A DNA stretch of 64,000 bases from contig JAWQFM010000001.1 of assembly GCA_033442325.1 (NCBI GenBank), forward strand, positions 477,324-541,323, read 5' to 3'. Under the pieces are notes generated by a model, which was not told where the DNA came from, searched no databases, and saw nothing but the letters and a program-made list of their open reading frames with translations. This stretch comes from Salpingoeca rosetta. Lineage: Eukaryota > Protista > Choanoflagellata. Shown here piece by piece: positions 7,951 to 13,900 of the stretch (positions are counted from its first letter, which is position 1; each line of letters opens with the position of its first letter). The translations under genes and the position numbers were made by a program.

Positions 7951-10900
7951 ATGGGCGATGCTTCCGCAAAGGGATCAGCAGAGCCCACGATTTTCATCTC
8001 TTTGCGGTTCTCCGAGGCGGGGGCAGCCGGAAAAGAGCTCAAGCGGCAGCTGGAGACGCAGCACAGGCTGACCTGCTTTCTCTGCGACGTCGAGCCTGGC
8101 AACGACATCTCCAGCAACATTGTGGCCGCGTTGGACGCGTGCAAGCTCGCCGTCATCATGGGCACGCGCACGTACGGACAGCCGACGCCAGCCAAGTTCA
8201 GCACCTTTGAAGAGCTGCGCTTCATCATCAACGAGAACAAACCGTTCTTCCTCATCAAGATGTGCGACCGATTCGAGGTGCCAGACACGCGATTCCGGCT
8301 CCCAGATGACATCTCATACTTTCTATGGAGGGACGGCGCCGCCTCGTCATCAGCACCAGCACCACCCATTCCCCGCAATCTAGTGCAGCAGATTGTGTCT
8401 CGACTGAAAGATGCACAAGCGAACCCAACAGCGCCACGGCAGCCATCGCAGCCACCGCGCGCGCTGCGGGTAGTACCGCAGCGCTTGGACGAGCGCCTGA
8501 CAAAGTGGCTGGATGCGCGCGACCTGCTGCACAGCATCGGCGTTGCGCTGGAGAAGAACGGCGTGCACACCATGGCTCATCTTCGCGCCATATTGCTTCG
8601 CGAGGGCGACGCGGCCTTTCAACAGGTGGGCGGCGTGCTCTCTGTGTGGTCGTTGCTCAAGCACCGCGTGCGCCCGCTGCACATTGCGCTGTTCCACGAC
8701 GCGTGCCGCGAATCAGACTGGATGGCACCCCTCCCGGCAAGCAGCGATGACGACGACGATGCTGCTGGTGATGCTGATGATGATAATGGTGATGAGAGTG
8801 GAAGGCGTGGCGCTGGTGTGAGTATTGGCCCTCGAGTCGCTGCTGGCCGTCATGGTGATGCCGGTGATGGCAGCGGTGGTCAGCAGAAGAACGTGAGCAG
8901 CAGCAGCAGCAGTGGCAGGCAGGTTGTCTCTGGCACGAGTCTTGACAGTACTGGCCGTGCGAGCGCGGAAGCTGCTGTAACATTCAAGACTACCCCCACC
9001 ACCGCCACCACCAATAGTAACAACAACACCAACAGCAATGACAACAGCAGCCGTGGCCGTCACGACCGTGGGAGCACCGATGCAAGTGACCCCGCTGCTC
9101 AGTTGGATCGCCTTCAAGTTGATGGCGCCTTGATGGGTGACAGTCGTGGCAGTGTCAGTGGTGCTGATGTTGAAAGTGGCAGTGGTGGTGGCAGTGGCAG
9201 TCGGTTTCTCGGTGCTCTGCTGCCACGACGGGGAAGGAGAGTGACGTTCGCAAACGCGGCCGAGACATTCAGCCTGTGGTACACCGCCGCCCCTCTACTC
9301 GGCAATGGGGATGACAGTAATGGTGATGGTGACAGTAATGGTGATGGTGGTGGTGGTGGTGGTGGTGGTGGTGGTGATGCAAAAAGAGCGTTTCTGGCCA
9401 AGCTGTCGCAGATCAAGAGCAAACGCGTGCAGGACCAGATTATGGAACTGTGGAAGGGGACCAACCCAACACTTGTCGAGTAAGTATAAACGGTGTTTGG
9501 ACACGTGCGTGTGTATAGGCGGTGCTGGACACGTGTGTGTGTGTGTGTGTGTGTATAGACGGTGTTTGACACGTGTGTGTGTGTGTGTGTGTGTGTGTGT
9601 GTGTGTGTTATACTGTGGTGTGCTGTATGTTGTGCTGTGTGTCCGTCCGCAGTTGTGCGGATTCTGATGTGCAGCGATTGTGAGGGGCGCCTTCATGCTG
9701 TCTCACATGAAACCGTCATGCCTCTTGTCCACATTTCCACGTGTGTGCTAGTTTGTTTGAGTGCCAGCTCGGTGAATCGGCTGGAGAAATTCTCGCGCTC
9801 GCCGTCAAGGGTGCCAGTACTTTCGTGTCCCTCGGGTACGTGACCTCTGACTTGCTGCTGTTGTCGCTGCGCCCACCTGATCTCCATCACACCCCTTCAC
9901 TCATCGTACACAACAACAACAACAACAACAACAACAACAACAACAACAACAACAACAACAACAACAACAACAACAACAACAACAACTGCTTGGCATCTTT
10001 CACTGTTGACATTGTGCTCATCGCCAAACACCATCACCGCCACTACTAATTCCGCCACCCAATCACCACCCAATCACCAGGCTCGACAACAACCGTCTTG
10101 GTGACGCTGGTTGCGCTGCGTTTGCGTCCATCGTCGGCGACACAGAGGCCCTCGCCAAGCTGTTGTATGTGCTGTTGCACCTTGCTTGTGCTCGGTTGTT
10201 TGGCTGGCCTTGCTTGTCTTGTAATGACTGCGCTTGTCTGTTTCGCTTGGTTTGGTTTCGGTTTTGTGAACGTACTCCTGTGTAGCAGTCTATCGATGAC
10301 AGTGCAGCTGGCACTCATTTGCCTGTACTCTCCCCCTCCCCCATTCACATCCCCACCATCACCACTGCTGTTTGCAGTTTGTGCAACAATCGCATTTCGG
10401 ACATGGGCGCGACGGCGCTGGCGGATATGCTCAACACCAACACGCATTTGCGCGAACTCAGGTGCGCCTCGCCGTGCTCACACCGCCTCTTTTATGTGTG
10501 TGTGTCTGTGTGTGTGTCTGTGTGTGTGTAAATCAGTGAAAGAGAGCGAGCGTGTGAGATTGGCAGTTCAAGCATGAGCGTCGATGCGTGTATGCGCGCC
10601 TTTGCATTCGTCCACATGCATACAATACGCGCATACACACTCGCTCAACCATTCTCGCTTGTATTCCTGTTCAACGTTTCGTTGGGGTGCAGACTGCACG
10701 ACAACCGCATCGGTGACTTCGGTGCCACGGCAATTGCAGAAATGCTTGCAAGCAACAAGTCCCTGGAAATCCTGGAGTGAGTGGAGATGACAGTTCTGGC
10801 GCTGTTCTACTGCGTGGTTGTTTCAGTGCATACATTCACGTACACATAGACACACACGCACACACACACACACTCACACACATACACGCACACAAAGGCA

Positions 10901-13900
10901 CTCACATAGACACACACTGCCTTTCTCGCTCACGCACACGCGCGATGTTTGCTCTCATATGCACACCTTTCAGGCTGAACAACAATCAAATTGGCGACAG
11001 TGGTGGCCGAGCGATTTGCGCATCCCTCGCAGGCAACACCGCGCTGCGTGAACTCGAGTAAGTTGTGATGGTGTCAATCACGTATGAAGTGCCACACACT
11101 CACGTACACACTCGCTTCGTTCGCGCACAGTTACTCACTCACACCCTGCCTCCCCTCCCCCTCCCCCCTTCAGCCTGCGCGGGAATCGCCTTCGCGGAGA
11201 TGCCGGTCGTGCACTCGGAACAGCGCTCAAGGAAAACAGGGCCCTGCGCAAGCTCAAGTGAGCGCCCGTACCCGCCTTCTTGGCATGCAATGCGTTGACT
11301 GTCTCGTTTTGTTGCTCCAGCTCCCGTGTGCTCCTCCTGAACTCATGCTCACACTACTACTACTACTACCACCACCACCACCACCATTACAATCCACCTC
11401 TGCCTCCATTAGTCTGAAGGGCAACAGGCTTGGTCCCCAGGGCGGCCGTGCCGTTGGCGAAGGTCTCGTCACCAATCTCGCCCTCCACAAACTCATGTCA
11501 GTCGCAATAGCCCCCCCCCGCGCGCGTTGTGTGTGTGTGTGTGTGTGTGTGTGTGTGTGTGTGTGTGTGTGTGTGTGTGTGTGTGTGTGTGTGTGTGTGT
11601 GTGTGTGTGTGTGTGTGTGTGTGTGTGTGGTGCTCTGTGGGGATTTGCAAGCGAATGTGTTTCAGTGGAGCAATGACTTCCTCCAGCAACCTTCCCGTGC
11701 TCACTCACGACCGCACGTGTATGTGTGTTTGTCATTTGCAGCCTCGATGACAACCTGATTGGCGATGAGGCGGGCCAGGCCATTGGAAACGCCCTCAAGC
11801 ACAACATGTCGCTCGCGAAACTCCAGTGCGTTGGCCATTGCTCATGTTGCTGCTGCCGTTGTTCCTGGTGGTGGTTGCTGGGCTTCCTGTGGTGTCTGTC
11901 ACTTGTCCGCCTGCGGCTTGTCTCACATGTGTTTGATGTTTGTTGTGATGTTTTTGTTTGCATCGTGTGTGTCATTGCAGTCTCAAGAACAACCGACTTG
12001 GCGAGCTGGCCGGCTATGCGATTGGGGAGGCGCTTCTTCGCAACACCATCCTGCGAGAGCTGCAGTCAGTTAACCCTACCCATATTGTCGCTGTCCCTTG
12101 TGTGGCGTTTTCCCGTCCCCGCAGACGGCCGCTGCTTTAGTTTCGCCCTGCCACATCAACACACACGTGCACACACGCGTATGCGTGGCACGATTGTTTC
12201 ACACTCACGACCCCGTTCCTGAACCTCCTCCTCCTCCTTCTCCTCCTCCTCCTCCTCCTCCTCCTCCTCCTCCTCCTCTGCCCTTTCTTTCTCTTCCACC
12301 GTTTCTGCTGCCTCCTTCAGTCTTGACAACAACCGGTTGGGCGATGTTGGAGGTCACGCGCTGGGCGAAGGACTCCAGCGCAACACCTCCATCCACATCC
12401 TCGGGTACAGTAATCAGCACATGCACATGCACGCACACGCACACAAAGTAGCAAGCGCATGTGTGTCACGTGATAACGTCCAACGCGCACGCACATTTTC
12501 TTGCATGCGCATCTCTGTGTTATTCATCTGATGCTGTTTATTTTTGCAAACGTGTACACTCACTCACACACACACACACACTCTCTCTCTGCTTCTCTCC
12601 CACATGCATACACGCACACACACACACACACTCTCTCTCTCTCTGCTTCTCTCCCACATGCACACACGCACACACTCACACACACACTCTCTCTCTCACT
12701 GCTTCTGTCGCGCATACACACACGCACACGCATTCCCTTTCTCTCTCTCTCTCTCTCTCTCTCTCTCTGTGCCTCCGCAGACTCCACAACAGCGGGTTTG
12801 GAGCGCGCGGACTTGAGGGGCTGGCGGCAGGACTTGAGGACGTTTTCTCACAGCGCCGCACCATTGCAAAGCTGTACGTGTAGCGCACAAACACTGGCCA
12901 TATTGTGACCTGCTACAGCACACAGTCAACCACGCACATGAGACTTATACAATCTCGCACACTCACCCACTGGCACTTTCACACTGGCACACACGCGCTT
13001 CTCTCCTCTTCTCGTCACACCCTCTTTCACACCCAATCTTACAAATTTCACACACACACACACACATATTTCCACGTCACATCACACCCCTCACACATCT
13101 CGTGCCCCGGTCATCAGGTTGCCGCCGCGCGTTCGGCACGCCATTTACCGCCACCGCCAGCGGAAGAAGGAGCTGTCGGCGCTGCTGGAACTCGGATCCG
13201 TGCCCCTGTCCACTGCAAAGGTGTTCGTGTGCGGGGATTACGGCATTGGCAAGACGACGCTGATTGGCGCGCTTCGCTCGTCGCAGTCGTGGTTTGACAC
13301 GGTGCGCTTGCGGCGGCGGAAGCAGCTGGACGAGCCCGATCGCCCCGAGGAGCGGACGTCTGGCATTCAGGTGCACAACTTCACCATGAAGCGCTGCAAG
13401 GACGATGGTGTGAGCCTTACTCCGACTGGCAGCCGCACGCACTCGCTGTCATCGTCGTCGCCATCATCAACCACACTGGCGTCGTCGGCATCCTCGTCGT
13501 CATGCGCATCGCAGGCAACGGTTGCCGCTGCTGCGCGTGCAATTGCGGCGTCAAAGAAGTGCTCTCTACGGGTGTATGACTTTGCGGGACAGCTTGACTA
13601 TCACGTGGTGCACGAGCTGCTGTTTGCGGACCACAACGCCGTCTTTGTCGTGTGCGTGGACCTGTCCAAGGACCCCGGCACGGTGACGCGCTCGCTGCTG
13701 TACTGGCTCCGCTTCATCAACACGCGCCTGCACCAGGCCGTGTACCGCAGCCAGACACCGCCACACGTCGTTGTCGTCGGCACCAAAGTGGACAAGCACC
13801 ACGCCCGCCTCACCATCACGCGCAAGGACACAAACACGGTTGCCACGTTTCCGGCAGGGGACGGGCTGCTGGGCAGCGAGGAATTTCAACAGTGGTTTGG

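What the first reader, a model, noticed from the sequence alone, without database searches (positions are those of the whole stretch)
9752..12873. Ten consecutive 84-nt, phase-2 exons each encoding one LRR in a Roco gene
Seen: exons 9752-9835, 10081-10164, 10378-10461, 10693-10776, 10974-11057, 11174-11257, 11413-11496, 11742-11825, 11981-12064 and 12321-12404 are all exactly 84 nt (28 aa, LxxNxLGDxGxxAL..L..N..L..L) with identical phase, followed by a 93-nt cap exon. Any subset can be skipped, duplicated or swapped in frame, and microsatellite-rich introns offer recombination substrates. Known: one-repeat-per-exon LRR arrays occur in NOD-type NLRs and in brown algal ROCO genes proposed to diversify by exon shuffling. 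Inference: a diversifiable ligand-binding surface in a unicellular holozoan.
Basis: partly seen in the sequence, partly recalled or inferred. Interest (0 to 1): 0.82.

Follow-up and report, generated by a model that had tools for sequence, protein, structure and literature searches.

The report
One-repeat-per-exon LRR array, choanoflagellate Roco
The ten 84-base exons are real, are transcribed, and each encodes one leucine-rich repeat of a Salpingoeca rosetta TIR-LRR-Roc-COR protein, but in this gene the array is old and all exons were spliced in, in order, so any diversification is seen in its paralogues, not here.

Summary
Ten exons of exactly 84 nt, each with AG/GT and a phase-2 intron on both sides, are followed by a 93-nt cap exon (12781-12873). 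RNA-seq reads and transcript contigs show the junctions from exon 1 through LRR exon 8, in genomic order. No skipping was seen, but depth was only 1-6 reads per junction.

The gene is a roughly 1,473-aa protein of Salpingoeca rosetta.

One LRR per 84-nt exon is a trait of the whole family. All 18 Roco loci examined have such arrays, with about 2-11 exons found per locus, and the genome holds at least 144 such units.

In this gene the exons are only about 50% identical to each other (maximum 61%). The best match to any exon in the 17 paralogue stretches fetched is 64%. The introns hold no spare cassettes. So there is no sign of recent duplication, swapping or alternative splicing here.

Some paralogues do show it. 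One has six nearly identical exons that differ almost only at the predicted concave-face codons (pN/pS 2.7 against 0.24).

The closest known cases are brown-algal ROCO genes and vertebrate NOD/NLRC LRR exons. I found no published description for choanoflagellates. Two other first-stage notes report the same kind of gene elsewhere in this genome.

The parts
7951..9479 (+). Exon 1 coding part (ATG at 7951; 509 codons plus 2 nt). It holds the TIR domain, a conserved short helical stretch and a long low-complexity linker. Its last residues supply the start of the first LRR beta-strand.
   Evidence: An RNA contig is continuous over 7900-9311. The joint 9479>9752 is GT..AG and is seen in reads and contigs. 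The open frame is shown.
7990..8430 (+). TIR-fold domain, with a candidate catalytic Glu (E88 of the protein) in the STFEEL motif at 8200-8217.
   Evidence: Pfam TIR_2 gives E=0.0013 and 19.6 bits, below the cutoff of 28. The AlphaFold2 model has pLDDT 82. Foldseek top hits are SARM1, plant NLR, MAL and MyD88 TIR domains, with probability 1.0 and target TM-score up to 0.70. The family profile aligns to the Roq1, RUN1 and SARM1 TIR domains.
9752..9835 (+). LRR exon 1 (84 nt, phase 2-2), a degenerate, cap-like repeat.
10081..10164 (+). LRR exon 2 (84 nt, phase 2-2).
10378..10461 (+). LRR exon 3 (84 nt, phase 2-2).
10693..10776 (+). LRR exon 4 (84 nt, phase 2-2).
10974..11057 (+). LRR exon 5 (84 nt, phase 2-2).
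11174..11257 (+). LRR exon 6 (84 nt, phase 2-2).
11413..11496 (+). LRR exon 7 (84 nt, phase 2-2).
11742..11825 (+). LRR exon 8 (84 nt, phase 2-2).
   Evidence: The loose end of the RNA contig at 11496 reads straight into this exon.
11981..12064 (+). LRR exon 9 (84 nt, phase 2-2).
12321..12404 (+). LRR exon 10 (84 nt, phase 2-2).
12781..12873 (+). 93-nt C-terminal cap exon of the LRR domain (phase 2-2).
   Evidence: sequence only.
13118..14197 (+). Roc GTPase exon. G1 (GDYGIGKT) is at 13233-13256, G3 (DFAGQ) at 13578-13592 and G4 (TKVD) at 13779-13793. The acceptor and the 3' end (14197, or 14191) are inferred.
   Evidence: Pfam Roc gives 39 bits against a cutoff of 27.
14437..15043 (+). COR exon (end of COR-A, start of COR-B). 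Boundaries are inferred.
   Evidence: Pfam COR-A gives E=1e-4 and COR-B E=0.06, both below cutoff. It is 53% identical to the same exon of a paralogue, and that paralogue's reading frame also starts anew at this point, which suggests an intron there too.
15431..15703 (+). Last coding exon with the stop codon (TGA at 15701-15703). The intron 15044-15430 holds a (GT)n run and is inferred.
   Evidence: The whole model sums to 4,419 nt, or 1,473 codons.

Best explanation
This is the ligand- or partner-binding LRR domain of an expressed cytosolic multidomain GTPase of Salpingoeca rosetta, with the architecture TIR, linker, 11 RI-type LRRs, Roc, COR. Each 28-residue repeat sits on its own 84-nt exon. 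The intron always splits the codon of the exposed residue inside the beta-strand motif LxxL-x-LxxN, as in vertebrate NOD/NLRC genes. This layout records how such arrays grow, by tandem duplication of an exon-plus-intron unit. It is shared by every Roco paralogue examined in the genome. In this gene the array is ancient, every repeat is unique, and all exons were spliced in, in order, in the RNA data examined. The symmetric exons are therefore a historical footprint and a latent capacity, not an active diversity generator here. The following mechanism is inferred, not shown. The LRR horseshoe binds a ligand or holds the protein autoinhibited. Roc-COR acts as the nucleotide-dependent switch and dimerisation module. 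The N-terminal TIR is the output, by NAD+ cleavage or TIR-TIR scaffolding. That would make the protein a functional analogue of plant TIR-NLRs, with Roc-COR in place of NB-ARC.
For: Exon anatomy and phase are shown. Spliced RNA with all junctions from exon 1 through LRR exon 8 in order is seen in two stranded RNA-seq runs and two transcript assemblies; first mates lie on the minus strand, so the RNA is plus-strand. The TIR fold is supported. The RI-type class follows from the repeat profile hitting NOD2, ribonuclease inhibitor, LRRC34 and DRC5 structures, and from LRR_6 matching across exon borders. It is a family trait: all 18 Roco loci examined have 84-nt phase-2 LRR exons, and the genome holds at least 144 such units. 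Paralogue PTSG_12838 scores TIR_2 + LRR_6 + Roc + COR-A in Pfam. The array is old: mean 50% and maximum 61% nt identity between its exons, at most 64% to any exon in the fetched paralogue stretches, and no homologous introns. The introns hold no hidden cassettes.
Against: RNA depth was low, at 1-6 reads per junction with about a quarter of each run read, so rare skipped isoforms would be missed. Junctions after exon 8 were not examined. No other strain or species could be compared. COR and TIR are below Pfam's curated cutoffs for this protein. The function of LRR, Roc-COR and TIR here is inferred only by analogy; no ligand, GTPase activity or NADase activity is shown. The top structural matches of the repeat profile include ciliary LRR proteins, so an immune role is not demonstrated.
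Confidence: 0.72

Rival explanations
1. The array is used as a combinatorial splicing cassette. Subsets of the symmetric 84-nt exons are skipped to give receptors of different length and surface, as reported for brown-algal ROCO genes and human NLRP3.
For: Every exon is 2-2 symmetric and a multiple of 3, so any skip stays in frame. Precedents are PMC11378527 and PMC6642158.
Against: No skipping joint was reported, at a 2% share setting and the tool's minimum read support, in two raw RNA-seq runs. Two independent transcript contigs of 1,575 and 1,539 nt carry exons 1-7 contiguously and in order. Depth was low, and only the first seven LRR exons were laid.
Confidence: 0.1
2. The array is being actively reshuffled in the germ line, by exon duplication, loss or gene conversion with paralogues, with microsatellite-rich introns as recombination substrates.
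For: Paralogues show this process. One (G000:C19:337000-346999) has six exons 93% identical with introns 90-94% identical. Another has two 100% identical exons. The number of exons found differs from locus to locus.
Against: In this gene, exons are at most 61% identical to each other and at most 64% to any exon in the fetched paralogue stretches. Introns share only simple repeats. A DNA search of the whole genome returned only microsatellite hits. The same microsatellites occur all over the genome, so they do not mark this gene.
Confidence: 0.08
3. The protein is not a receptor for foreign ligands. It is a housekeeping signalling scaffold, for instance cytoskeletal or ciliary like LRRC34 or DRC5, or a MASL1-like regulator, and the exon structure has no functional meaning.
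For: Several best PDB matches of the repeat profile are axonemal LRR proteins. This gene's repeats are old and diverged, as expected under long-term conservation. Expression is low and was seen in all four RNA data sets laid.
Against: An N-terminal TIR with the candidate catalytic Glu retained. The family is strongly expanded in this lineage, with few relatives elsewhere: 7 hits at E<=1e-30 among 1.84 billion representatives. A sister subfamily carries PARP domains. Paralogues show a diversifying signature on concave-face codons. Taken together these features are typical of immune or non-self sensors.
Confidence: 0.2

Closest known systems
Brown-algal LRR-ROCO genes (Ectocarpus, Saccharina; PMC3341825, PMC11378527)
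   Same: They have an LRR-Roc-COR core, one LRR per exon, exon lengths that are multiples of three so that indels stay in frame, a large lineage-specific family, and variable positions on the LRR surface.
   Different: The algal exons are 72 nt and encode 24-aa repeats of a different LRR class; here they are 84 nt and encode 28-aa RI-type repeats. The algal introns hold non-coding LRR cassettes and the exons are highly similar and alternatively spliced; none of this was found in this gene. This protein also has an N-terminal TIR.
Vertebrate NOD/NLRC LRR domains (exonic modularity; PMC6642158)
   Same: They are RI-type with 28 residues per repeat, one repeat per exon, and the exon border at the same place inside the beta-strand. 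The repeat profile hits the NOD2 structure.
   Different: The nucleotide switch here is Roc-COR, not NACHT, and the effector is TIR, not CARD or PYD. The intron phase of the vertebrate exons was not checked here. Whether the shared exon module is inherited or convergent is unknown. Richter et al. (PMC6040629) found no NLRs in choanoflagellates.
Plant TIR-NB-ARC-LRR receptors (TNLs: Roq1, RPP1, RUN1)
   Same: They have an N-terminal TIR that aligns with and folds like this one, a nucleotide-binding switch and an LRR sensor, in large diversifying families.
   Different: The domain order differs (TIR-LRR-switch here, TIR-switch-LRR in plants), as do the switch family (Roc-COR GTPase against STAND ATPase) and the LRR class.
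Minimal Roco proteins (bacterial LRR-Roc-COR such as Chlorobium tepidum Roco; human MASL1/MFHAS1). From general knowledge, not tested here.
   Same: They share the LRR-Roc-COR order and have no kinase domain.
   Different: They have no TIR, are intronless or differently organised, and are not an expanded family.

Membership tests
Roco proteins | Roc (Ras of complex) GTPase domain with intact G1, G3 and G4 motifs | tested here: met
   Pfam PF08477 scores 39 bits against a cutoff of 27. GDYGIGKT, DFAGQ and TKVD are all present.
Roco proteins | COR domain directly C-terminal of Roc | tested here: inconclusive
   COR-A gives E=1e-4 and 22.7 bits against a cutoff of 35.3, and COR-B gives E=0.06. 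It is in the right place and 53% identical to the matching exon of a paralogue. Other family members (PTSG_12838, PTSG_08667) are named COR-domain proteins by UniRef. Probably met, but below Pfam's own threshold.
RI-type (ribonuclease-inhibitor-like, LRR_6) leucine-rich repeats | 28-29-residue period with LxxLxLxxNxLgdxGaxxLaxaL consensus | tested here: met
   Nine repeats fit the consensus. The profile hits NOD2, RNH1 and LRRC34 structures at E 1e-9 to 1e-4. Single exons give sub-threshold LRR_6 hits, up to 19.1 bits, to the second half of the model, because the motif spans the exon border. Paralogues pass LRR_6.
TIR domain | Flavodoxin-like TIR fold | tested here: met
   The AlphaFold2 model has pLDDT 82. 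The top 26 Foldseek matches are all TIR domains (probability 1.0), as are nearly all of the 46 at E<=1e-3. Pfam TIR_2 is only 19.6 bits against a cutoff of 28.
TIR domain | Catalytic glutamate and NADase activity | not testable with these tools
   A Glu stands in the position of the plant '(W)CLxEL' motif, here STFEEL (residue E88). This placement is by motif comparison from general knowledge of plant TIRs, because the printed alignments stop before this motif. The Glu is kept in most of the 24 family members aligned. Activity is untested.
Exon-shuffling ROCO receptors (brown-algal type) | One LRR per exon with frame-preserving symmetric exons | tested here: met
Exon-shuffling ROCO receptors (brown-algal type) | Highly similar exons within and between genes, showing recent shuffling | tested here: not met
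   Exons are at most 61% identical within the gene and at most 64% to any exon in the fetched paralogue stretches. The feature is met in some paralogues.
Exon-shuffling ROCO receptors (brown-algal type) | Non-coding LRR cassettes in introns | tested here: not met
   A frame-free matrix scan of both strands over 7900-16000 finds only the nine canonical exons.
Exon-shuffling ROCO receptors (brown-algal type) | Alternative splicing of LRR exons | tested here: inconclusive
   None was seen over exon 1 through LRR exon 8, at low depth.
Exon-shuffling ROCO receptors (brown-algal type) | Diversifying selection at solvent-exposed LRR positions | tested here: inconclusive
   The repeats of this gene are saturated (pS 0.64-0.70); pN/pS is 0.77 at exposed codons against 0.65 at scaffold codons. 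The paralogue in L034 gives 2.73 against 0.24. No orthologue was available for a proper test.
NLR (NACHT/NB-ARC-LRR) receptors | STAND ATPase (NACHT or NB-ARC) domain | tested here: not met
   Pfam finds Roc/Ras-type GTPase only, with no NACHT or NB-ARC.

The most novel reading that the evidence does not exclude
Salpingoeca rosetta, in a lineage reported to lack NLRs, may carry a lineage-expanded repertoire of NLR-analogous cytosolic sensors, TIR-LRR-Roc-COR and LRR-Roc-COR-PARP. In this reading their RI-type LRR arrays grow by tandem duplication of 84-nt exon cassettes and are under diversifying selection on the concave face. The cassette, with its border inside the beta-strand, would be the same module by descent as the one in animal NOD/NLRC genes. 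That would date the modular immune LRR exon to before the origin of animals. The window gene would be an old, fixed member of this repertoire.
Probability: 0.25. Interest if true: 0.8.

Novelty: new variant of a known kind. Interest (0 to 1): 0.5.

Why it matters
[quoted passage not shown] They are used to reconstruct the pre-animal immune toolkit, and published surveys report TLR-like proteins, SARM1, cGAS and STING but no NLRs (PMC6040629). This genome holds a family of at least 18 Roco GTPases with RI-type LRR sensors. Some carry NAD+-consuming domains (TIR or PARP), and they are built from the same one-repeat-per-exon module as NOD/NLRC receptors. That family would be a candidate for the missing cytosolic sensor class. 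It would also be an independent second case, after brown algae, of Roco genes evolving by LRR exon duplication. S. rosetta is genetically tractable and has known bacterial cues, so the idea can be tested. For this particular gene the message is more sober: the symmetric exon layout alone does not show that diversity is being generated.

Tried and rejected
Only 7900-11527 could be laid, so exons 8 to the cap are not covered by reads.

2. A DNA search of the genome with 9700-12900 returned only microsatellite matches, and only 40 of 2,565 candidates were scored. Exon copies were therefore compared directly against 17 fetched paralogue stretches.

3. Pfam on single 27-aa exon peptides gave only weak LRR_6 hits, because the model spans the exon border. 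A repeat profile searched against the PDB replaced it.

4. I looked for spliced transcript-derived proteins of this gene, and so for isoforms, with the word-indexed protein search. It returned only a paralogue and environmental fragments.

5. Environmental relatives from Tara Oceans metagenome scaffolds (L067, L068) were checked for upstream 84-nt LRR exons. There were none, and their product starts just before Roc. They say nothing about conservation of exon structure.

6. The S. rosetta TIR assayed in bioRxiv 10.64898/2026.04.20.719644 is a C-terminal TIR of another protein (F2UB80), not this family.

7. Pfam on the stretch after the TIR (8476-8865) and on the linker found nothing.

8. Inter-repeat pN/pS for this gene is uninformative because of saturation.

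9. Literature searches for ROCO with Salpingoeca or choanoflagellate found no description of this family. One 2010 paper mentions two unreported ROCO proteins in Monosiga (PMC2927912).

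
Full report
**What is there.** Reading 9500-13200 and checking each stated exon by script confirms the observation. The intervals 9752-9835, 10081-10164, 10378-10461, 10693-10776, 10974-11057, 11174-11257, 11413-11496, 11742-11825, 11981-12064 and 12321-12404 are each exactly 84 nt. Each is preceded by AG and followed by GT. Each is open only in the frame in which the first base completes a codon begun in the previous exon. 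All introns are therefore phase 2 and all exons are 2-2 symmetric. The cap exon is 12781-12873 (93 nt, AG/GT, same phase). The introns are 116-376 nt and hold microsatellites: (ACA)26, (TG)n, (CCT)18, a (TG)51 run and a 54-nt CA/CT array.

**Transcription and splicing.** Fourteen listed runs hold part of the stretch, and three raw RNA-seq runs of the same organism were offered.
- Two stranded RNA-seq runs and two assembled-transcript data sets support these joints, all GT..AG: 9479>9752, 9835>10081, 10164>10378, 10461>10693, 10776>10974, 11057>11174 and 11257>11413.
- The transcript contig's loose end at 11496 continues with the first 30 bases of exon 11742.
- First mates lie on the minus strand, which in the usual stranded libraries means a plus-strand RNA.
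- Contigs of 1,575 and 1,539 nt carry the end of exon 1 and LRR exons 1-7 contiguously and in genomic order.
- No exon-skipping joint was reported at a 2% share setting. Each junction was covered by only 1-6 reads, so rare isoforms cannot be excluded.
- The junctions after exon 8 rest on sequence alone.

**The gene.**
- Roc: the open frame downstream hits Pfam Roc (39 bits, cutoff 27). The G1, G3 and G4 motifs are intact at 13233-13256, 13578-13592 and 13779-13793.
- COR: the next exon hits COR-A (E=1e-4, below cutoff) and weakly COR-B. It is 53% identical to the same exon of a paralogue, and that paralogue's reading frame also starts anew at this point.
- TIR: upstream, exon 1 (ATG at 7951 to 9479) begins with a domain that Pfam barely sees (TIR_2, E=0.0013). 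An alignment of 24 copies from this genome gave an AlphaFold2 model with pLDDT 82. Its Foldseek matches are SARM1, plant NLR, MAL and MyD88 TIR domains, with probability 1.0 and target TM-score up to 0.70. The family profile also aligns with the Roq1, RUN1 and SARM1 TIRs.
- Candidate catalytic residue: a Glu in the motif STFEEL sits where plant TIRs have their catalytic Glu. I placed it by motif comparison, because the printed alignments stop short of it. Most of the aligned family members keep this Glu.
- Whole model: a model with inferred downstream boundaries sums to 4,419 nt, or 1,473 codons. The architecture is TIR, low-complexity linker, 11 LRRs, Roc, COR, with no kinase. By eye I saw no signal peptide at the N-terminus.

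**Organism.** It is Salpingoeca rosetta. The closest database proteins are PTSG_12838, PTSG_06523, PTSG_08667 and others, and one record's contig length equals that of a contig of this assembly.

**Repeat class and exon border.**
- A profile of the ten exon peptides hits RI-type LRR structures. These include NOD2 (5irm/5irl), ribonuclease inhibitor (1dfj, 4per), LRRC34 and DRC5.
- Single exons match only the second half of Pfam LRR_6 at their start. This shows that the motif LxxLxLxxN straddles the border.
- Each exon ends with ...L-x-x-L. The split codon gives the next residue, which in this LRR motif is an exposed position. The following exon starts L-x-x-N-x-L.
- Hoss et al. describe the same arrangement for human NOD/NLRC genes: one 28-aa LRR per exon, with the border always at the same place in the beta-strand (PMC6642158).
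- The first exon here is degenerate, and the cap exon does not fit the repeat matrix.

**Is this gene diversifying?** The evidence says no, or not recently.
- Its ten exons are on average 50% identical in nucleotides (maximum 61%) and 15-56% identical in amino acids.
- The best match of any of them to the 111 exons collected from 17 paralogue stretches is 64%.
- Its introns share only simple repeats.
- A genome-wide DNA search gave only microsatellite hits, and also showed that such microsatellites are ubiquitous.
- A frame-free scan of both strands over 7900-16000 found no additional or non-coding LRR cassettes.
- Nei-Gojobori comparison between the repeats is saturated (pS 0.64-0.70). It shows no excess of replacement at the presumed exposed codons (pN/pS 0.77 against 0.65).

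- The Roc-COR frame has about 18 paralogous loci in the genome. Every one examined has arrays of 84-nt, AG/GT, same-phase single-LRR exons, from about two or three up to eleven per 10-kb stretch.
- A profile search finds at least 144 such units at 30 or more places, mostly in short open frames, that is, in single exons.
- Six paralogues share the N-terminal TIR. Another subfamily ends in a PARP catalytic domain.
- In the paralogue at G000:C19:337000-346999, six exons are identical at 74 of 84 positions. The variable positions are codons 2 and 3, the split codon and its neighbouring base, plus two single changes. The intervening introns are only 90-94% identical.
- In that paralogue pN/pS is 2.73 at exposed codons against 0.24 at scaffold codons. 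This is the signature expected of tandem exon duplication, or conversion, combined with selection for diversity on the binding face.

**Relatives elsewhere.** A search of 1.84 billion representative proteins gave only 269 hits at E<=1e-3 and 7 at E<=1e-30. Those looked up are S. rosetta proteins or unnamed marine metagenome fragments, so the family looks lineage-restricted.

**Comparison with the known.**
- Brown-algal ROCO genes encode each 24-aa LRR on a 72-nt exon. They show shuffling, spare cassettes in introns, positive selection and alternative splicing (PMC3341825, PMC11378527).
- The present gene shares the LRR-Roc-COR core and the one-repeat-per-exon principle. It differs in LRR class and exon size, in carrying a TIR, and in failing the tests for recent shuffling, spare cassettes and, so far, alternative splicing.
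- It shares exon modularity with NOD/NLRC genes but has no NACHT domain, so it is not an NLR.
- Functionally the nearest analogy is a plant TIR-NLR with Roc-COR as the switch. That is inference.
- I found no paper describing Roco genes of Salpingoeca. Richter et al. report no NLRs in choanoflagellates and do not list Roc among TIR-associated domains.
- Two other first-stage notes of this scan describe the same kind of gene elsewhere in this genome, which agrees with the family-wide pattern.

**Verdict.** This is a Roco gene with a modular, frame-neutral LRR array in a unicellular holozoan. In this gene, however, the array is an old, fully included set of unique repeats, within the limits of the RNA depth available. 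The interesting biology lies at the level of the family: the TIR and PARP effectors, the expansion, and the young arrays with hypervariable concave-face codons. It also lies in the open question of whether the 84-nt RI-type cassette is shared with animal NOD/NLRC genes by descent.

Noticed in passing
L034 (G000:C19:337000-346999), exons at 2520-2603, 3223-3306, 3916-3999, 4617-4700, 6306-6389, 6986-7069: This TIR-LRR-Roc-COR paralogue has six 84-nt LRR exons identical at 74 of 84 positions. The variable positions are codons 2 and 3, the split codon and its neighbouring base, plus two single changes. The introns are 90-94% identical. pN/pS is 2.73 at exposed codons against 0.24 at scaffold codons. 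This fits a young tandem exon array under diversifying selection, or conversion that spares the binding codons.
   Followed up: partly
G000:C17:474000-491499 (L066 + L033): This paralogue has two 100% identical LRR exons about 7 kb apart, with a 5.7-kb gap inside its LRR array. The TIR lies 10.5 kb upstream of Roc. It could be a recent segmental duplication, an insertion or an assembly problem.
   Followed up: no
P0005 (PTSG_13043), P0011 (PTSG_09169); for example loci L040-L044: A second Roco subfamily has LRR_6-Roc-COR followed by a PARP catalytic domain. Two different NAD+-using effector domains (TIR at the N-terminus, PARP at the C-terminus) are thus attached to the same LRR-Roc-COR core in one genome.
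   Followed up: partly
36 places in G000, for example C4:552868-553278 and C35:355573-356025: The divergent TIR-like domain (FISLRFxEA...GTxTYG...EEL...KPFFxVKMC) is a family of at least 36 copies. Most lie outside Roco genes, and some sit in open frames of 1,000-2,400 aa.
   Followed up: partly
window 8480-8760: A short conserved helical stretch after the TIR (LD..LT.WL....L...G) is shared by the TIR-Roco paralogues. It has no Pfam match.
   Followed up: partly
window 8890-9037: Odd joints ('goes back 122', 'skips 73') and high-depth foreign loose ends lie in the low-complexity part of exon 1. They are most likely reads and contigs of other transcripts with similar simple repeats, not isoforms.
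   Followed up: no
window 15044-15430 and 14138-15700: The inferred last intron is an in-frame (GT)n-rich stretch that translates as a long Cys-Val run. A stop-to-stop ORF therefore reads straight through it, and ORF-based gene callers would mis-annotate the COR region.
   Followed up: no
window 19965-20700: Plus-strand open frames here hold ankyrin-repeat-like motifs (TALH..., TPLH...G....V..LL..GA). This is probably an unrelated neighbouring gene.
   Followed up: no
L038 (G000:C34:397000-406999), plus strand 6058-7793: A second array of six 84-nt LRR exons lies on the opposite strand next to a Roco paralogue. Some of these genes may therefore sit in head-to-head or clustered arrangements.
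   Followed up: no
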